DNA from: Octopus sinensis
Taxonomy: Eukaryota
Direction: 5' to 3'
Assembly (NCBI RefSeq): GCF_006345805.1
Contig: NW_021825759.1
Location: forward strand, 1 to 14,926
Length of the DNA stretch: 14,926 bases
Under the pieces are notes generated by a model that was given only the letters and a program-made list of their open reading frames with translations, searched no databases and had not been told where the DNA came from. Of this stretch, positions 233-14,317 are shown piece by piece; position 1 is the first letter of the stretch; the number at the start of each line of letters is the position of its first letter. Both the position numbers and the translations under genes were made by a program.

Positions 233-1337
233 ACTTTGCCTTTCATCCTTTCGGGGTCGATTAAATAAGTACCAGTTACGCACTGGGGTCGATGTAATCG
301 ACTTAATCGTTTGTCTGTCCTTGTTTGTCCCCTCTATGTTTAGCCCCTTGTGGGTAGTAAAGAAATAGGTATTTCGTCTGCCGTTACGTTCTGAGTTCAA
401 ATTCCGCCGAGGTCGACTTTGTCTTTCATCCTTTCGGGCTCGATTAAACAAGTACCAGTTACGCACTGGGGTCGATATAATCGACTTAATCCCTTTGTCT
501 GGCCTTGTTTGTCCCCTCTATGTAAGCCCCTTGTGGGTAGTAAAGAAATAGGTATTTTGTCTGCCGTTACGTTCTGAGTTCAAATTCCACCGAGGCCGAC
601 TTTGCCTTTCATCCTTTCGGGGTCGATTAAATAAGTACCAGTTACGCACTGGGGTCAATGTAATCGACTTAATCCGTTTGTCTGTCCTTGTTTGTCCCTT
701 CTGTGTGTAGCCCCTTGTGGGTAGTAAAGAAATAGGTATTTCCTCAGCTGCTACGTTCTGTGTTCAAATTTCGCCGAAGTCGACTTTGCCTTTCATCCTT
801 TCGGGGTCGATTAATTAAGTACTAGTTACGCACTGGGGTCGATGTAATCGACTTAATCCGTTTGTCTGTCCTTGTTTGTCCCCTCTGTGTTTAGCCCCTT
901 GTGGGCAGTAAAGAAATAGGTATTTCGTCTGCCGTTACGTTCTGAGTTCAAATTCCGCCGAGGTCGACTTTGCCTTTCATCCTTTCGGAGTCGATAAATT
1001 AAGTACCAGTTACGCACTAGGGGCGATGTAATCGACTTAATCCGTCCGTCTGTCCTTGTTTGTTCCCTCTATGTTTAGCCCCTTGTGGGCAATAAAGAAA
1101 TAAGAAACTTTAGAACGCCGGGCGAAATGCTTAGCAGTTTTTCGTCTGTCTTTACGTTCTGAGTTTAAATTCCGCCGAGGACGACTTTGCCTAACATCCT
1201 TTCGGGGTCGATAAGATAAGTACCAGTTGCGCACTGGGGTCGATGTAATCGACTTAATCCGTTTGTCTGCCCTTGTTTGTCCCCTCTGTGTTTAGCCCCT
1301 TGCTTATTGCCCTTGTGGGCAATAAAGAAATAAGAAA
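233..1337 (+). repeat. Head-to-tail tandem array of six units of a tRNA-derived SINE (family A; Meta/MESC-like central domain)
   Basis: The motif ACTTTG(C/T)CT recurs at 233, 416, 599, 783, 967 and 1184 (periods 183, 183, 184, 184, 217). Units 2-6 carry a B-box-like GAGTTCAAATTCC (one-base variants in two units); all carry the CCTTTCATCCTTTCGGGGTCGAT..AAGTACCAG domain. A full-length copy with its head is at 13955-14190. The domain name is from recall. Confidence 0.9.
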
Positions 1338-1806: not shown

Positions 1807-2860
1807 TGGCACCGCGAGTGTCGCGTTGCTCTCAAGCAACTCTGCCGTCCTGGGTCGACCTTGAGTGACTTCAACACAACCAAAGCATTCTATAGGGGTT
1901 TAGTGGAGGGGAGGTACGGACGACGAGCTCGGGGCGAACCTGGACGTCGACGAGGAGTACCTGACCCGCTGTTCGGGACGACTTTCGGGCCAGGGCCCAT
2001 GGACACTTCCAGAGATCCCTGGCCTGGCAGTGCTACCGAGAAGCGCTACCCGTTCGGGATAAGCTCTACAGACACGGCTCGAGAAACACGGGGCCGACCT
2101 GCCCGAGATGCGGTCAGAGCGACGAAACCGTTCTGCACGCACTCGTGCAGTGTCCAACAATTCCGACTTGTGGGCTTATGTCGAACAACTGCTGTCACGT
2201 GTGGGACGAGTCGGTTTATCAGCTGAGTCTATCGTCAATATTGTCACGCCTCCCTCCTTCAAACGGGAAGGAGGAGCTATTTTCATCATCCTTGTGGCTA
2301 TGGCGAAAGAATGTATCTGGTGGACGCGTCTGAAAGGATTGGAGACAAACACTTTCCTCTCTGGTCAATCTCTCATCACTTCTCAAGTACCACTTGAAAA
2401 GGAAAGTGAGAGTAGAGAGGCAAGTTTTGTCTAGCGAATTTTAAAAAAAGATGGGTGAATGTAGCAAGAATGGCACGTATGAATGACGAAGCCACCTTGA
2501 GCATGATCCTATGAACCCAGAAATTGAAAACAGAGAGTTGCTTATTCGCAAAAAAAAAAAAAAAGAAATATAACATGTGACTCCATTGACGAGGTTACCG
2601 TGGTCTTTTCGTAGGCTTTTCTTTCCACGGGTAAACTCACCTGTCCTCCCCTTTACACTCATATTGACATTTCTGTGATAACGATCCCTATGATCATTTT
2701 TTTCCCTCTCCCCCTTCCCCCCCTTTTTTTGTCCTCTTCTCTCCTTTTACGATCCCCTTTGATCGAAACTCTCCCTTCCATTTTTTTAAAACTTCAAAAG
2801 AAAGCTCTACCTTGTAATTTGTTCTATCTGTGTGCAGCCCTGTGTGGCTAATAAAGAAAC
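1807..2860 (+). mobile_element. 5'-truncated, frameshifted Tx1/L1-clade non-LTR retrotransposon: ORF2 C-terminus (about 1807-2514) plus 3' UTR
   Basis: Stitching frames gives WHRECRVALKQL..TTKAFYRGLV..FQRSLAWQCYREALPVRDKLYRHG..TCPRCGQSDETVLHALVQCPTI-DLWAYVEQLL..AIFIILVAMAKECIWWTR..KRWVNV..MIL* (stop 2512-2514). The C-x2-C-x8-H-x4-C knuckle preceded by an F..W..LP motif is typical of the zf-RVT end of L1/Tx1 ORF2. The pyrimidine-rich 3' UTR ends in AATAAAGAAAC followed by (ATCT)n. Confidence 0.85.
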
Positions 2861-3886: not shown

Positions 3887-4385
3887 TAGTCCATAAAATA
3901 GGATTTGACTACACCTCCATATAGAGCACAATTTAAGCTATCTTTTCATGGAAGAAGGTTTATGTTCCTATAACCTGTGTTAATTCTGTAACCCTTTAAA
4001 ATGGAAGATAAGAAAGTTCATTTTCGGCATTTGATGCTTTGGGAACCAGACAAAAATTGCTGCAGCTCGGCTGGGATGTGTTACCTCACTCTCCATATTC
4101 ACCAGATATTGCTCCTTCGGATTTCCACTTATTCAGATCTCTGCAGAATAGTCTTTATGGTAAAAATTTCAATTCCTTGGATGACGTAAAAAGATACCTT
4201 GATGAATTCTTTATCATGAAACCACGTCAATTCTGGGAAGAGGGTATTTTCAAGTTAAAGGAAAGATGGAGATGCATTATGCAACAAATACTTCATATTT
4301 GGTTGATTAAAAATGTAATGGCAAGTATTTATTGACCTTTTTCTTTCCTTTTAAAATCGGCACGAACTTTCCAGACAACCCAATA
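3887..4385 (+). mobile_element. Internally deleted mariner (Tc1/mariner DD34D) transposon with its 3' terminal inverted repeat
   Basis: N-terminal MEDKKVHFRHLMLW (ATG at 4001) is fused near 4044 to C-terminal TRQKLLQLGWDVLPHSPYSPDIAPSDFHLFRSLQNSL..GIFKLKERWR. The YSPD(L/I)APSD motif is diagnostic of mariner. It ends in the TIR-like AAAATCGGCACGAACTTTCCAGACAACCCAATA (4353-4385). No 5' TIR is visible. Confidence 0.92.
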
Positions 4386-4787: not shown

Positions 4788-5222
4788 CACACACACACAG
4801 ACACACACACACACACACGCAAACACACACGCACACATACACACACATATATACACATACACACACATACACACACATACATATACACACACACGCACGC
4901 ATACACACACATACACACACACACACGCATATACACAAACACATACAAACACACATACACACACACGCATACATACACACACACGCACACATATACACAC
5001 ACGCACACACACATACACACACACATACACACACATACATATACACACACACGCACGCATACACACATACACACACACACACGCATACACACAAACACAT
5101 ACAAACACACATACACACATACACACATACACACATACACACACACGCACACACATACACACATACACACATACACACACACATTATTCATACATATACA
5201 TACATACATCTATATATACATA
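4788..5222. repeat. Imperfect (CA)n/(CATA)n microsatellite
   Basis: Direct reading. Confidence 0.97.
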
Positions 5223-5456: not shown

Positions 5457-5569
5457 GGTGGTGGTGGTGGCGGTGGTGGTGGTGGGGACGTAGTCATAAC
5501 AATGGAAATTGCTTTGTAGTAGTAGTAGTAGTTGTGGTGGTGGTGGTGGTGGTAGTAGTAGTAGTAGTA

Positions 5570-5602
<33 letters not shown>

Positions 5603-5630
5603 ATAGTAGTAGTAGTAGTAGTAGTAGTAA

Positions 5631-5666
<36 letters not shown>

Positions 5667-5735
5667 TGGTATTAGTAGTAGTAGTAATAGTAGTAGTGGT
5701 AGTAGTGGTAGTAGTAGTAGTAGTAGTAGTGGTAT

Positions 5736-5767
<32 letters not shown>

Positions 5768-5943
5768 CTAGTAGTAGTAGTAGTAATAGTAGTAATAGTA
5801 GTAATAGTAGTAGTAGTAGTGGTGGTGGTGTTGGTAGTAGTAGTAGTAGTAGTAGTAAGAGTAGTAATAGTAGTAGTAGTAGTGGTGGTGGTGGTGGTAG
5901 TTGCAGTAGCAGTAGTAGTAGTAGTAGTGGTAGTAGTAGTAGC
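5457..5943. repeat. (GGT)n/(TAG)n trinucleotide microsatellite
   Basis: Direct reading. It produces the poly-S, poly-V, poly-L and poly-Y ORFs. Confidence 0.97.
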
Positions 5944-6420: not shown

Positions 6421-6454
6421 TTTCCACACACGTGTGTGTGTGTGTGTGTGTGTG

Positions 6455-6659
6455 AATTGTTGTATGTGTGTGTTTGTCCTCCCACCATCGCTTGGCAAAC
6501 GATGCTGGTGTGTTTACGTCCCCGTAATCTAGCGGTTGGGCAAAAGCGACCGATAGAATAAGTACTAGGCTCACAAAGAGTAAGTCCTGGGGTCGATTTG
6601 CGCCACTGAAGGCGGTGCTCTAGCATGGCCGCAGTCAAATGACTGAAAAGAATAAAAGA
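6455..6659 (+). mobile_element. Family B SINE tail (inverted duplicate of 7313-7518)
   Basis: Shares private variants with the 7313-7733 copy, e.g. CAGTGGCGCAAATCG and CATACAACAATTCA on the opposite strand. Confidence 0.9.
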
Positions 6660-6934
6660 CTACAGGTACGATTTTGTGTCTCTGTAGTGTGTGTCACGCA
6701 CACACACACACACACCAGCCTTACCATTTAGCAACCGGTGCCGGTTTGTTTACGTTATTATTAGCTAGCGTTTCAGTAAAAAGTGAGCTAGAGAATAACT
6801 AGCTCATGGAGTCATTTAGCTCGACAATGACCTTTCAGTCAGTGACCTATTAACCATTATTCAACGAGAAATATGCTTTCCTTGAGAGATGAAACTGGAA
6901 AAACTAGTATTATTTCTATTCGTTTATTTAATCA

Positions 6935-7063
6935 ACTTGGTTGTGATGCATGTGCCTGGTGTACCCTTATCAGACGGGTAGTCATGATGGGTATATTGGG
7001 CTTCGTATATTTTACCCCAGTGTCACTTTGATGGCATGCACTGCTCTCTCACTCAATAATAAT
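6935..7063 (+). mobile_element. Probable 3' end of a LINE with a stem-loop and (AAT)n tail
   Basis: Ends in a CAGTG...CACTG stem-loop, then CTCTCTCACTC and AATAATAAT. I recall it as an abundant octopus LINE terminus; not verified. Confidence 0.5.
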
Positions 7064-7312
7064 ACTAGTTTTTCCAGTTTCATCTCTCAATGAAAGCATA
7101 TTTCTCGTTGAATAATGGTTAATAGGTCACTGACTGAAAGGTCGTTGTCGAGCTAAATGACTCCAGGAGCTAGTTATTCTCTAGCTCACTTTTTTACTGA
7201 AACGTTAGCTAATAATAACGTAAACAAACCAGCACCGGTTGTTAAATGGTAAGGCTGGTGTGTGTGTGTGTGCGTGACACACACTACAGAGACACAAAAT
7301 CGTACCTGTAGT

Positions 7313-7515
7313 CTTTTACTCTTTTCAGTCATTTGACTGCGGCCATGCTGGAGCATCGCCTTCAGTGGCGCAAATCGACCCCAGGACTTTTACTCTTTGT
7401 GAGCCTAGTACTTATTGTATCGGTCCCTTTTGCCGAACCGCTAAGTTACGGGGACGTAAACACACCAGCATCGTTTGTCAAGCGATGGTGGGAGGACAAA
7501 CACACACATACAACA

Positions 7516-7570
<55 letters not shown>

Positions 7571-8478: not shown

Positions 8479-8970
8479 CTTTTGCAACATACACTATAAT
8501 AAACTCCAGGGGAATTAACTCATTCTTTAATAATTATAAATGGGGTACCAAAGGTTATTTCCCTTCGGACGACATCGTCGTGGAGGTCTTGTATACGTGT
8601 GATCTACATATATATTTGCGCATGAATTCCAACGTGTAGCTAATTTGAAAATGTTTTCAAAGATCGGGTTAAATACAAATATACACATCATTCACACTTT
8701 GATACATAATACATACATAAACACTTACATACACACTTACGTACATAGCTACAAATGAACACGATACCTGGGACTATAAAAAAAAACTGCAAGATTTTAG
8801 GATTTAAAGGATGAAGGTTAGAGATACTTTTTTGAACAGCCTCGCTACCAAGGAGGTGAACGGTTAAAATTTACTTTAAATTAAAAAGAAAAGGAGCATA
8901 GACACACACAGATGTATTATATATATATATATATATATATAATCAAAATAAGCAACAAGACTGACTCCGG

Positions 8971-9061
8971 TAATTTGGTACGATCGTTTCGTACTACAAT
9001 CATTTTATAAACGTTGTAAGTATTCACCAGTTTAAAATGCTGAGCACTCATCAGACAATTA
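8971..9061 (-). ncRNA. Type I hammerhead ribozyme, copy 1 (closing pair of stem I mismatched)
   Basis: Minus strand: UAAUUGU-CUGAUGA(9054-9048)-GUGCU...AGUAC-GAAA(8990-8987)-CGAUCG-UA^CCAAAUUA. The U opposite C next to the core suggests impaired activity. Confidence 0.7.
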
Positions 9062-9203
9062 TAGAGTTTTCCATTAATACAAAAATTTTCATATCAAGTG
9101 GCAAACATTATAGAGAAGGTAGATACATAGACAAAGAGGTGGATTTAAATTTTAAGAACATTTGAGGTAGTGAAGCCCATTTTGTATTAATGGAAAACCT
9201 CTA

Positions 9204-9296
9204 TAATTGGCTGATGAGTGCTCAGCATTTTAAAAGTGTTGTAATACTTACAACATTTAATAAAATGATGTAGTACGAAACGATCGTACCAAATTA
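9204..9296 (+). ncRNA. Type I hammerhead ribozyme, copy 2 (core intact)
   Basis: Stem I UAAUUGG(9204-9210) pairs with CCAAAUUA(9289-9296), one bulge. CUGAUGA is at 9211-9217. Stem II GUGCU(9218-9222) pairs with AGUAC(9272-9276) and extends into a long hairpin. GAAA is at 9277-9280, followed by palindromic stem III ACGAUCGU. The GUA triplet at 9286-9288 predicts cleavage after 9288. Confidence 0.82.
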
Positions 9297-9469
9297 CCGG
9301 AATCATTCTTGTTGCTTATTTTGATTATAATCACCCCGCGGATTTTTATGGATAACACCATACAGAATTCTGGTGCATCTAAATTAAGTACTATATTCAT
9401 TTGAATCTAAATTTTTGCTGAACTTATATATATATATGAAGAAAAAACTTACTTAGAAATGGATGCGTG

Positions 9470-9727: not shown

Positions 9728-10320
9728 TATTCACTAAAAATTGATAGATAAGCCACAACCCGATTAAATGGATGAGTTCATAGCTATTTAGTCCACTCAC
9801 ATAATTCTCTCTTCCTCCAAAACCTGTTATAAACTCCAAACTTCTTTCCAACTTCCCACAGGGTCTTCAAAGTAAAAACTTTATTAGTTTAACAATCTAA
9901 CTTTCACTAAACCATTCCTCCCTACAAACGGACACCCAGATACACATGAGGAGGTGTTAAACTGACCGAACATCTTTTAAATGCTATATTCTCACGTTCA
10001 TACCAACATAGTCCCTTTTCCTTTACAGCCTTTCATTTCCATCCTACGATTACCAAATATATATACAGATATATACACACACCTGTTGAATAGTTAAACT
10101 AACACACTAACTCCTGACTATATATATACCATCATTACAATTACACATACACTTATATTCCTTCATTCTCTATCTCTTCTTCTTTTCTTAGCTTTTTACT
10201 TTCACTTTCACTTCCCTATTATTGAACTCAACATATATTTATCTTCGGCATTCTTCTCTCTTATTAAAGTCAGGTATTTATTATCACTAGCAGTGAACTG
10301 GTCTTCATTATACTTGTACT
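9728..10320 (+). repeat. Copy A of an unclassified ~590-bp repeat
   Basis: Collinear with 11374-11920 and the reverse complement of 12461-13052. The strand label is arbitrary. Confidence 0.9.
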
Positions 10321-10329
10321 TTTATATGT

Positions 10330-10383
10330 GCGAGTCAATGTGTGCTTGTGTGTGTGGTGTGTGTGTGTGTGTGCGCGTGTGTG

Positions 10384-10430
<47 letters not shown>

Positions 10431-10568
10431 TTTTATTTGAGGGAATTGATAAAAGGTGTTTTTTCTAATTTATATAATATATATATATATATATATATAG
10501 ATATATATATTATCTATATATATATATATACATATATATGTGTGTGTGTATGTATGTATATATATATA
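10330..10568. repeat. (TG)n/(TA)n microsatellite
   Basis: Direct reading. Confidence 0.92.
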
Positions 10569-11373: not shown

Positions 11374-11920
11374 TATTTACACTCGCACATTATTCTCTCT
11401 TCCTTTAACACCTGTTATAAACCCCAAACTTAATTTCACCAGTGTAAGGTCTTCAAATTAAAACCGTCAATTAGTTTATCAAATGAACTTTTACTAAGCT
11501 ATATCTAACAGTACATACATACGCATGCGCGCACACACACATACACACAAATGATGAATAGTTAAACTGACTGAACATCTTTTAAATGCTATATTCTCGC
11601 GTTCATACTAACTCAGTCCTTTTTTTCCTTTACAGCCTTTCATTTCTATCTTACGATTACCAAATGTATATACAAATATATACACACACCTGTTGAATAG
11701 TTAAACTAACACACTAACACCTGACTATATATACCATCATTACAATTACACATACACTTGTATTCCTTGTTTCTCTACCTCTTCTTCTTTTCTTAGCTTT
11801 TTACTTTCTCTTTCCTATTATTGAACTCAACATATATTTACCTTCGGCATTCTTCCCTATTATTAAAGTCAGGTACTTATTATCACAACCAGTTAACTGG
11901 TCTTCCCTATTCTTGTACGG
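11374..11920 (+). repeat. Copy B of the ~590-bp repeat (segment about 11490-11560 replaced by CA-rich sequence)
   Basis: TTCTCTCTTCC..CCTGTTATAAAC.CCAAACTT...ACCAGTTAACTGGTCTTCCCTATTCTTGTACGG aligns with copy A. Confidence 0.88.
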
Positions 11921-11929
11921 AGATCTCTC

Positions 11930-12085
11930 CATGTAAGTAGTAGGTAGTATGTATGTATGTATGTTGTATGTATGTATGTATGTATGTATGTATGTTGTAT
12001 GTAATGTATGTATTGACAGATGATATATAAGCATATATATATATGTATATATAATATATATAATATATATATTATATATATGTAT

Positions 12086-12117
<32 letters not shown>

Positions 12118-12401
12118 ATGTATATATTATATATATTATATATAATATTATATAATATATAATATAATATATAAGTAATTATATATATATATATAATATA
12201 TAATATATATATATATAATATATATATATATAATATATATATAATACACTCACTCACAACTATATGTACATATATATACCAATATATCATATCTTCTATA
12301 GTATATTATATAATATTATATATCGGATCTATCTATATACACACACATGTGCCCGTATACGCATACGTGCGTGCGTACGTACACACACACACACACACAC
12401 C

Positions 12402-13954: not shown

Positions 13955-14190
13955 GGTGGCGAGCTCGCAGAAACGTCAGCACGCCGGGCGAAATGCTTAG
14001 CGGTATTTCGTCTCCCGTTACGTTCTGAGTTCAAATTCCCCCGAGGTCGACTTTACCTTTCATCCTTTCGGGGTCGATAAATTAAGTACCAGTTACGCAC
14101 TGGGATCGATGTTATCGACTTAATCCGTTTGTCTGTCCTTGTTTGTCCCCTCTGTGTTTAGCCCCTTGAGGGTAGTAAAGAAATGGGTAT
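13955..14190 (+). mobile_element. Full-length family A SINE (same family as the 233-1337 array)
   Basis: Head GGTGGCGAGCTCGCAGAAACGTCAGCACGCCGGGCGAAATGCTTAGC, B-box-like GAGTTCAAATTCC, central domain and tail TAGCCCCTTGAGGGTAGTAAAGAAA. Confidence 0.9.
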
Positions 14191-14317
14191 TGGCTGTGTG
14201 GTAAGTAGCTTGCTTACCAACCACATGGTTCTGGGTTCAATCCCCCTGCGTGGCACCTTCTACTATACCTCGGGCCGACCACCCTTGTGAGTGGAAATTG
14301 AAAGAAGCCGTCGTATA

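What the first reader, a model, noticed from the sequence alone, without database searches (positions are those of the whole stretch)
8938..9329. Back-to-back pair of type I hammerhead ribozymes in a short inverted element
Seen: both arms carry the hammerhead core in type I order (stem I, CUGAUGA, stem II, GAAA, stem III, GUA, stem I'). The plus copy (9204-9296) keeps every core base and stem; the minus copy (9061-8971) has a mismatch at the stem I closing pair. The copies point away from a 95-bp spacer, and both 3' ends finish at ..TTGATTATA, the left one running into (TA)n. Established: Penelope-like elements and metazoan non-LTR retrozymes carry type I hammerheads, and Penelope-like insertions often form inverted terminal structures. 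Inference: this is a non-autonomous, ribozyme-bearing retroelement family; no coding partner is visible in the window.
Basis: partly seen in the sequence, partly recalled or inferred. Interest (0 to 1): 0.85.

Follow-up and report, generated by a model that had tools for sequence, protein, structure and literature searches.

The report
Inverted hammerhead-ribozyme retroelement relic in octopus DNA
A 392-base inverted repeat in an octopus-like genome carries, on each arm, a textbook "dimer-type" type I hammerhead ribozyme motif near the outer end; it is most likely an ordinary head-to-head insertion of Penelope-like retroelement tails, a kind of element already described in many animals.

Summary
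Window 8938-9329 is an inverted repeat: arms 8938-9084 and 9180-9329, about 92% identical, with a 95-nt spacer. Each arm carries a complete type I hammerhead core on its outward-reading strand. The right copy is intact. The left copy has a U.C mismatch at the pair closing stem I and a decayed distal stem II. Helix III is the 8-nt palindrome ACGAUCGU, and two copies co-fold into the classic double hammerhead. Rfam Hammerhead_1 is the top match for both arms, but below threshold (18.6 and 15.2 bits against 34) because stem II is 59 nt long. A chance match is unlikely: 100 Mb of composition-matched random sequence gave no hit with the full feature set. The host is an octopod, and octopus genomes hold abundant Penelope-like elements. 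The geometry fits a Penelope-like double-strand-primed insertion: 3' ends outward, ribozyme about 40 nt from each end, (TA)n on one flank. I found no other copy anywhere, so family membership, non-autonomy and ribozyme conservation remain untested. A MITE or a local inverted duplication remain possible. As one transcript the element folds into a roughly 150-bp hairpin, so the "pair" is not a working unit. It is a new member of a known kind and of modest interest.

The parts
8918..8941 (.). (TA)12 microsatellite abutting the left end and overlapping it by 4 nt. It may be the insertion target. It also makes any target-site duplication ambiguous.
   Evidence: Read directly from the sequence. PLE insertion bias towards microsatellites, including (TA)n, is reported in PMC8557442. 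(TA)n arrays are very common in this window, so this is weak evidence.
8938..9084 (-). Left arm: the decayed copy of the hammerhead-bearing unit. Its 3' end points left.
   Evidence: Inverted repeat with 9180-9329.
8971..9061 (-). Left hammerhead motif. Core 9054->9048, GAAA 8990->8987, palindromic helix III 8987->8980, expected cleavage between 8979 and 8978. It has a U9055.C8978 mismatch closing stem I and a weakened distal stem II.
   Evidence: Rfam Hammerhead_1 scores 15.2 bits, E = 0.3, and is the top hit. The unconstrained MFE fold does not recover the hammerhead.
9085..9179 (.). 95-nt asymmetric spacer. Under the retroelement reading it is the extra 5' portion of the longer of the two copies. 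Which copy it belongs to cannot be told.
   Evidence: Arm homology stops sharply at 9084 and 9180. No ORF family hit.
9180..9329 (+). Right arm: the better-preserved copy. Its 3' end points right.
9204..9296 (+). Right hammerhead motif. Stem I 9204-9210 with 9289-9296, CUGAUGA 9211-9217, 59-nt stem II 9218-9276, GAAA 9277-9280, helix III palindrome ACGAUCGU 9280-9287, expected cleavage between 9288 and 9289.
   Evidence: Rfam Hammerhead_1 scores 18.6 bits, E = 0.024, with the full model aligned. The MFE fold recovers stems I and II, z = -3.67. Co-folding two copies gives the double hammerhead at -56.0 kcal/mol against 2 x -24.6.
9326..9333 (.). TATAATCA, a direct repeat of 8938-8945 that overlaps the inverted-repeat ends. 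Candidate target-site duplications are TA, TATA or this 8-mer, and they cannot be told apart.
   Evidence: Read directly from the sequence.

Best explanation
The locus is a dead insertion of a hammerhead-bearing retroelement of the Penelope-like (PLE) system. Two short 3'-terminal copies sit head to head with their 3' ends facing outward.

Inferred mechanism:
1. A PLE RT/GIY-YIG enzyme cut both strands of the target at or beside a (TA)n tract.
2. Each exposed 3'-OH primed reverse transcription near the 3' end of an element RNA.
3. Both cDNAs stopped early, one after about 150 nt and the other after about 245 nt.
4. The two copies were joined in the middle.

Each copy therefore keeps the element's 3' region. 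That region holds a type I hammerhead about 40 nt from the end.

Helix III of the hammerhead is too short to hold as a monomer: 2 bp plus a GAUC loop. Because ACGAUCGU is palindromic, two copies can form an 8-bp intermolecular helix III with stems I paired in trans. Cleavage would then need two sense copies, as in tandem element transcripts, and would fall after A9288 in the right arm and after A8979 in the left arm.

At this locus the ribozymes are relics. They are on opposite strands, the left one is damaged, and a transcript through both arms would fold into a hairpin.

What is shown: the inverted repeat, the complete motif, its thermodynamic fit to the dimer fold, and the octopod host. What is inferred: the PLE affiliation, the double-priming origin and any catalytic activity. 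Whether the source was an autonomous PLE or a PLE-dependent non-autonomous (retrozyme-like) element is open.
For: Motif:
- All core bases are present, with G10.1-C11.1 and an 8-nt palindromic helix III.
- Rfam Hammerhead_1 is the top family on the predicted strand for both arms, with the whole model aligned.
- The MFE fold of the right arm recovers stems I and II.
- RNAcofold of two copies yields exactly the double-hammerhead topology and gains 6.8 kcal/mol.

Chance: 8 of 3000 shuffles matched the bare descriptor. No hit in 100 Mb matched the descriptor plus G10.1-C11.1 or plus the palindrome.

Literature:
- Metazoan type I hammerheads typically have a 1-2 bp helix III capped by a 2-4 nt palindromic loop and act as dimers.
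- PLE hammerheads sit in the terminal repeats.
- Dual hammerheads on opposite strands 100-700 bp apart were seen in Schistosoma. These three points come from PMC4209133.
- PLEs often carry an adjacent inverted 5'-truncated copy and favour microsatellite targets (PMC8557442).
- A purified PLE protein cleaves and extends both DNA strands, and reverse transcription starts near the RNA 3' end (PMC11167929).

Host:
- A SINE-like ORF in the window matches an Octopus bimaculoides protein, and the window shares repeats with an O. bimaculoides chromosome at 70-92% identity.
- Octopus genomes contain many PLE families, including recently active ones (PMC13282606 and PMC8967140).
Against: - No second copy of the unit was found anywhere I could search. 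There is therefore no evidence for solo or 5'-truncated copies, for a parent PLE with the same tail, or for covariation.
- The Rfam scores are roughly half the gathering threshold.
- A 59-nt helix II is far longer than described for metazoan or PLE hammerheads, which have 4-8 bp.
- The antisense strand folds as well as the sense strand (z = -5.16). The hairpin is therefore a DNA palindrome and is not by itself evidence of RNA-level selection.
- Long terminal inverted repeats flanked by TA also fit a MITE.
- The window holds other inverted duplications whose ends do not coincide with repeat-family ends. A DNA-level origin of the inversion is therefore possible.
- No differential 30-40 bp 'tail' is visible.
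Confidence: 0.6

Rival explanations
1. The element is a miniature inverted-repeat DNA transposon (MITE or foldback type) with arms of about 150 bp. It would be mobilised by a cut-and-paste transposase, with a TA, TATA or 8-bp target duplication. The hammerhead motif would be either captured from a retroelement or a coincidence.
For: - The element is 388-392 bp, AT-rich and non-coding.
- The arms run to the very ends and are flanked by TA/TATA. An 8-bp direct repeat, TATAATCA, is also present at both ends.
- Tc1/mariner elements are present in the window (transposase remnant at 4012-4332).
- Tc1/mariner elements are abundant in octopus, and MITEs are annotated there.
Against: - The termini do not resemble any TIR I can name, which rests on memory only.
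- The TA flank is uninformative beside a (TA)n run.
- A full hammerhead with G10.1-C11.1 and a palindromic helix III arising by chance in a 150-nt arm is very unlikely: no such hit in 100 Mb.
- No second copy was seen.
- Hammerheads placed about 40 nt from outward-facing 3' ends are what PLE insertions produce.
Confidence: 0.15
2. A single hammerhead-bearing repeat (a solo retrozyme or PLE fragment) was already at this site. Its terminal 150 bp were later copied in inverted orientation by a DNA-level event, such as fold-back or template-switch replication at the AT-rich palindromic region. On this reading the symmetry says nothing about how the element inserts.
For: - The window contains other inverted duplications: 6432-6914 with 7058-7541 at 96%, and 9728-10319 with 13052-12463 at 91%.
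- The arm ends of the first pair do not coincide with the limits of the interspersed repeat inside it, as judged against the O. bimaculoides matches.
- The region is rich in (TA)n and internal palindromes.
Against: - It does not explain why both outer ends stop where the flanking sequence changes to (TA)n on one side and unique DNA on the other.
- PLE biology already predicts this exact geometry.
- It is untestable without other copies or an orthologous locus.
Confidence: 0.12
3. The hammerhead resemblance is a coincidence in an AT-rich palindromic repeat, and no ribozyme was ever encoded.
For: - There is no Rfam hit at gathering threshold, and the lax-filter scores are 18.6 and 15.2 bits against 34.
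- Stem II is atypically long.
- The bare descriptor does occur by chance at about 1 per 5-9 Mb. A genome-wide scan would therefore meet such hits.
- The two arms are not independent observations.
Against: - The features not built into the descriptor are all present: G10.1-C11.1, a fully palindromic 8-nt helix III, stem I extending to 7 bp, and a dimer co-fold identical to the double hammerhead.
- The motif lies in a duplicated, mobile-looking unit in a PLE-rich genome.
Confidence: 0.06

Closest known systems
Hammerhead ribozymes of Penelope-like elements (Cervera & de la Pena 2014, PMC4209133; Luense et al. 2017, RNA Biol, cited from memory)
   Same: - Type I topology with a conserved core and a G10.1-C11.1 pair.
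- A short palindromic helix III that implies action as a dimer.
- A location in the terminal region of a retroelement.
- Occurrence as dispersed single motifs and as pairs on opposite strands 100-700 bp apart.
- A larger-than-usual helix II.
   Different: - Helix II here is about 59 nt (three stacked helices), against 6-8 bp.
- There is no unpaired nucleotide between A9 and 10.1.
- Helix III keeps a 2-bp stem and tetraloop, like 'canonical' invertebrate hammerheads, rather than being absent.
- No PLE ORF or homologous pLTR was identified.
PLE insertion architecture: pLTR plus an inverted 5'-truncated copy (Craig et al. 2021, PMC8557442; Mob DNA 2024, PMC11167929)
   Same: - Head-to-head copies with 3' ends outward.
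- Heavy 5' truncation.
- A microsatellite at the junction.
- A hammerhead near the 3' end.
- An enzyme shown to cut and extend both target strands.
   Different: - Only about 150 bp and about 245 bp remain.
- There is no ORF, no direct pseudo-LTR, and no recognisable 30-40 bp one-sided tail.
Metazoan non-LTR retrozymes (Cervera & de la Pena 2020, PMC7229834; bioRxiv 10.64898/2026.07.22.740005)
   Same: - Small, AT-rich and non-coding.
- A type I hammerhead with a 2-bp helix III plus a palindromic tetraloop, as in invertebrate motifs.
- Thought to depend on PLE machinery.
   Different: Retrozymes are defined by direct tandem repeats of 170-400 bp, each with a hammerhead, which yield circular RNAs. 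This locus is an inverted pair, not a tandem, so it cannot release a unit-length RNA.
MITEs / foldback elements
   Same: Under 400 bp, non-coding, with long terminal inverted repeats and a TA-type flank.
   Different: MITEs are not known to me to carry hammerheads. Copy number, the target-site duplication and the transposase partner are all unverified here.

Membership tests
Hammerhead ribozyme, type I (Rfam RF00163) | Conserved core C3 U4 G5 A6 N7 G8 A9 / G12 A13 A14 / A15.1-U16.1 / H17 (not G) | tested here: met
   Both arms have CUGAUGA, GAAA, the A-U pair and UA. Right arm: 9211-9217, 9277-9280, 9280/9287, 9288. Left arm: 9054-9048, 8990-8987, 8987/8980, 8979.
Hammerhead ribozyme, type I (Rfam RF00163) | Three helices around the core, with helix I open-ended, and a G10.1-C11.1 pair | tested here: met
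   Right arm: stem I is 4 bp, a bulged A, then 3 bp. Stem II is closed by G9218-C9276. Helix III is 2 bp plus a GAUC loop. The left arm has a U.C mismatch at the 2.1-1.1 pair.
Hammerhead ribozyme, type I (Rfam RF00163) | Covariance-model score at or above the curated gathering threshold (34 bits) | tested here: not met
   No hit at gathering threshold. With lax filters the scores are 18.6 bits (right) and 15.2 bits (left). The full model is aligned, with a 55- or 53-nt insertion in loop 2.
Hammerhead ribozyme, type I (Rfam RF00163) | Conservation of the core and compensatory changes in the stems among homologues | tested here: inconclusive
   The only comparison available is the two arms: 11 differences, none in the core or helix III (about 1.4 expected by chance) and none clearly compensatory. 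No other homologue was found.
Hammerhead ribozyme, type I (Rfam RF00163) | Site-specific Mg2+-dependent self-cleavage | not testable with these tools
   The only evidence is thermodynamic: the dimer co-fold equals the double hammerhead at -56.0 kcal/mol against -49.2 for two monomers.
Penelope-like element (autonomous) | An ORF with a telomerase-like RT and a GIY-YIG endonuclease | tested here: not met
   Pfam was run on 20 selected stop-to-stop segments of at least 45 aa, including those around the element. The only family above its curated cutoff was a zf-RVT LINE fragment at 1965-2330; two other hits were far below cutoff. The other segments were not scanned.
Penelope-like element (insertion fragment / pLTR-derived) | Hammerhead in the terminal repeat, near the 3' end of inserted copies | tested here: met
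   The expected cleavage sites lie 39-41 nt from each outer end.
Penelope-like element (insertion fragment / pLTR-derived) | An adjacent inverted 5'-truncated copy, giving a head-to-head arrangement | tested here: met
   The arms point outward. The inner ends are unequal if the 95-nt spacer belongs to one copy. A MITE would show the same geometry.
Penelope-like element (insertion fragment / pLTR-derived) | Sequence homology to the 3' end or pLTR of a PLE in the same genome | not testable with these tools
   No eukaryotic genome or repeat library is searchable here. The 62 kb of O. bimaculoides that I sampled has no copy.
Metazoan non-LTR retrozyme | At least two direct tandem units of 170-400 bp, each with a type I hammerhead | tested here: not met
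   TRF finds no tandem array at 8900-9400. The two copies are inverted.
MITE | Terminal inverted repeats, small size and no coding capacity | tested here: met
   The arms are 147 and 150 nt at about 92% identity, the total length is 392 bp, and no ORF family is hit.
MITE | A defined target-site duplication and many copies that keep both ends | tested here: inconclusive
   TA, TATA and the 8-bp TATAATCA are all possible duplications beside the (TA)n run. No further copies are available.

The most novel reading that the evidence does not exclude
The 392-bp inverted unit is itself the mobile element. It would be a cephalopod family of PLE-dependent or foldback-type non-autonomous elements in which either strand's transcript carries, near its 3' end, a dimer-type hammerhead with an unusually long (about 60-nt) helix II. 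That would make it a hammerhead subclass and an element architecture not yet described.
Probability: 0.1. Interest if true: 0.55.

Novelty: new member of a known kind. Interest (0 to 1): 0.3.

Why it matters
If confirmed in other genomic copies, this would extend the catalogue of hammerhead-bearing Penelope-type retroelements to cephalopods. It would also add a variant with a very long helix II. In addition, it would give a clean natural example of the head-to-head product expected from the double-strand priming seen in vitro for a PLE enzyme. It would not change how these elements are understood. The motif type, its link to retroelements and even its occurrence as opposite-strand pairs are already published.

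Tried and rejected
1. Rfam at gathering threshold over the whole window gave nothing. Rfam at E<=10 over 571 nt gave no hammerhead hit. The Hammerhead_1 alignment appeared only when each arm was searched alone with laxer filters.

2. I looked for other copies and found none.
- blastn of the element against the window found only itself.
- Exact and gapped patterns found nothing in viral contigs.
- A gapped pattern found nothing in JGI metagenomes.
- A 19-mer found 7 metagenome loci and 2 GTDB loci. All are unrelated prokaryotic chance matches without CUGAUGA.

3. As a proxy for other copies I searched the peptides encoded by the arms. A full HMMER scan of 1.84 billion representatives found one hit, an unrelated translated satellite.

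4. An exact look-up of ten window ORFs, meant to find the source contig, found none in the collection.

5. I sampled the host genome through a 76-kb O. bimaculoides locus. It has no copy by blastn, by Rfam or by a covariance model built from the two arms.

6. Sequence strings searched in papers and supplements gave nothing relevant.

7. I considered a PacBio missed-adapter palindrome artefact and rejected it. The spacer is 95 nt of ordinary asymmetric sequence and the arms are only 150 nt.

I replaced it with selected stop-to-stop segments.

Full report
**1. What is there**

Window 8938-9329 is an inverted repeat. The repeat finder reports three collinear inverted blocks:
- 8938-9024 with 9243-9329
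- 9031-9070 with 9195-9234
- 9066-9084 with 9180-9198

Together they make arms of 147 nt (8938-9084) and 150 nt (9180-9329) around a 95-nt spacer (9085-9179). Aligned globally, the arms differ by 6 substitutions and 5 single-base indels. The element aligned to its own reverse complement gives E = 1.9e-90, and nothing else in the window resembles it. The left end runs into a (TA)12 tract at 8918-8941. The right end meets unique sequence.

**2. The hammerhead motif**

On the + strand of the right arm the order is that of a type I hammerhead:

| Feature | Coordinates |
|---|---|
| Stem I, 5' strand (UAAUUGG) | 9204-9210 |
| CUGAUGA | 9211-9217 |
| Stem II hairpin, 59 nt, closed by G9218-C9276 (the conserved G10.1-C11.1 pair) | 9218-9276 |
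| GAAA | 9277-9280 |
| Helix III: A9280-U9287 and C9281-G9286 around a GAUC loop | 9280-9287 |
| H17 | A9288 |
| Stem I, 3' strand (CCAAAUUA), with A9293 bulged | 9289-9296 |

The left arm has the same motif on the - strand:
- core 9054->9048
- GAAA 8990->8987
- helix III 8987->8980
- cleavage expected between 8979 and 8978

In the left arm the pair closing stem I is U9055.C8978, and the distal part of stem II has lost pairs.

**3. Is it more than chance?**

- CUGAUGA occurs once per strand in 14.9 kb, both times in the element.
- My descriptor required stem I of at least 4 bp, CUGANGA, stem II of at least 4 bp with up to 80 nt between the core and GAAA, 2-12 nt of helix III, UH, and the stem I return strand. 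It matched the right arm only.
- It matched 8 of 3000 dinucleotide-preserving shuffles of the window.
- It matched 11 times in 100 Mb of first-order Markov sequence of the same composition. None of those 11 had G10.1-C11.1 or a palindromic helix III.
- Features outside the descriptor are therefore the strongest argument. ACGAUCGU (15.1 to 16.1) is a perfect 8-nt palindrome. Stem I continues for three more pairs beyond a bulge.
- The two arms are copies of each other, so they count as one observation.

**4. Model-based and thermodynamic checks**

- Rfam finds nothing at gathering threshold, and no hammerhead hit when 571 nt are searched at E<=10.
- When each arm is searched alone, Hammerhead_1 (RF00163) is the best family on the predicted strand, with all 45 model positions aligned. 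The right arm scores 18.6 bits (E = 0.024) and the left 15.2 bits (E = 0.3). The threshold is 34 bits. Loop 2 holds 55 or 53 inserted nt where the model expects about 10.
- The unconstrained MFE fold of the right arm recovers stems I and II (-24.6 kcal/mol, z = -3.67). The left arm's MFE fold does not (z = -1.5).
- The antisense of the right arm folds equally well (z = -5.16). The hairpin is a DNA-level palindrome, and strand specificity rests on the core motifs and on the G.U pairs at 9220.9274 and 9236.9256.
- Co-folding two right-arm RNAs gives exactly the double-hammerhead topology, with an 8-bp intermolecular helix III and stems I formed in trans. The energy is -56.0 kcal/mol against 2 x -24.6.
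- The whole element as one RNA folds into a roughly 150-bp hairpin (-204.8 kcal/mol). The two opposite-strand ribozymes cannot cooperate, and a read-through transcript would bury the sense copy.

**5. Context**

The window is non-coding eukaryotic DNA, dense in microsatellites. It contains:
- a 184-bp tandem array of SINE-like units at 233-1102
- a LINE zf-RVT fragment at 1965-2330
- a mariner transposase remnant at 4012-4332 (recognised by eye)

No RT or GIY-YIG ORF is present among the ORF segments I scanned.

A SINE-like ORF (176-517, - strand) matches Octopus bimaculoides LOC106868243. A 76-kb stretch of an O. bimaculoides chromosome shares the window's interspersed repeats at 70-92% identity. 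The host is therefore an octopod. The species is not determined.

Recent repeat annotations report Penelope-like elements among the abundant octopus transposon groups, including recently active ones. The O. vulgaris annotation lists 31 PLE families with 336 recently active insertions (PMC13282606; PMC8967140).

**6. Comparison with what is known**

- Cervera & de la Pena 2014 (PMC4209133) describe metazoan type I hammerheads with a 1-2 bp helix III capped by a 2-4 nt palindromic loop that work as dimers.
- The same paper describes PLE hammerheads in the terminal repeats, with the conserved G10.1-C11.1 pair and palindromic 15.2-16.2 positions, found mostly as dispersed single motifs.
- It also reports [quoted passage not shown].
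- Craig et al. 2021 (PMC8557442) describe the typical PLE insertion: heavy 5' truncation, and often an inverted 5'-truncated copy adjacent at the 5' end. They also report a bias for microsatellite targets, with (TA)n named for Naiads.
[quoted passage not shown] This predicts head-to-head copies with 3' ends outward, which is the geometry seen here.
- Non-LTR retrozymes (PMC7229834; bioRxiv 2026) carry the same kind of hammerhead. They are defined by direct tandem repeats, which this locus lacks.

**7. Interpretation**

The best reading (confidence about 0.6) is a dead, head-to-head pair of short 3'-terminal copies of a PLE-system retroelement. Each copy keeps a dimer-type hammerhead about 40 nt from its 3' end.

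I could not decide between 5'-truncated tails of an autonomous PLE and a PLE-dependent non-autonomous family. No other copy was retrievable from the window, the DNA collections, predicted-protein databases or the octopus sample.

Three rivals remain:
- **A MITE or foldback element (0.15).** Long terminal inverted repeats and TA/TATA flanks fit. The 8-bp direct repeat TATAATCA at 8938-8945 and 9326-9333 overlaps the inverted-repeat ends, so the target-site duplication cannot be read.
- **A DNA-level inverted duplication of a solo hammerhead repeat (0.12).** The window has other inverted duplications, at 6432-6914/7058-7541 and 9728-10319/13052-12463.
- **A chance motif (0.06).**

**8. Novelty and verdict**

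This is a new member of a known kind: a type I, dimer-type hammerhead in a retroelement relic, apparently not yet described for cephalopods in the searchable literature. Its one unusual trait is a roughly 59-nt helix II. The "back-to-back pair" is an insertion by-product already noted in other animals, not a functional unit. Interest is 0.3.

Noticed in passing
window 233-1102 (homology extends to about 1337); related solo copies at 13969-14191 and 1695-1791: A tandem array of at least 4.7 units of 184 bp of a SINE-like repeat, at 91% identity between units. An ORF through it matches Octopus bimaculoides LOC106868243. ARAGORN finds no intact tRNA. A SINE-like unit arranged as a satellite-like tandem array is unusual.
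   Followed up: partly
window 6432-6914 and 7058-7541: A large inverted duplication: arms of about 483 bp at 96% identity with a 144-bp spacer. Microsatellites lie at or near its outer ends, (GT)n at 6432-6477 and (AC)n at 7496-7558. The interspersed repeat inside the right arm continues to about 7734, beyond the arm end, which suggests a DNA-level duplication rather than a transposon with terminal repeats.
   Followed up: partly
window 9728-10319 vs 13052-12463 (inverted, 91%) and 9798-10538 vs 11386-12144 (direct, 78%): An unclassified repeat family of 600-780 bp, present three times within 3.5 kb and starting 400 bp to the right of the hammerhead element. Its ORF-like segments hit no Pfam family. 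Homology does not extend into the hammerhead element.
   Followed up: partly
window 1965-2330 (+): The C-terminal fragment of a LINE reverse transcriptase (Pfam zf-RVT, E = 1.9e-07), with no upstream RT domain in frame.
   Followed up: partly
window 3992-4332 (+): A remnant of a mariner-type transposase, recognised by eye. A C-terminal stretch (...LGWDVLPHSPYSPDIAPSDFHLF...) is preceded in another frame by an N-terminal-like stretch, which suggests an internally deleted copy. Pfam gave no hit.
   Followed up: no
window 5516-5942 and 4788-5183: Very long microsatellites: (GTA)n of about 142 units and a (CA)n-rich array of about 400 bp. Overall the window is unusually dense in (TA)n, (CA)n and tetranucleotide arrays.
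   Followed up: no
window 9271-9290 (and 8977-8996 on the - strand): GUACGA...UCGUAC around the GAAA box can form a 6-bp hairpin that competes with the hammerhead fold. It appears in the MFE fold of the left arm. It could act as an inactive alternative conformation, as is known for dimer-type hammerheads.
   Followed up: partly
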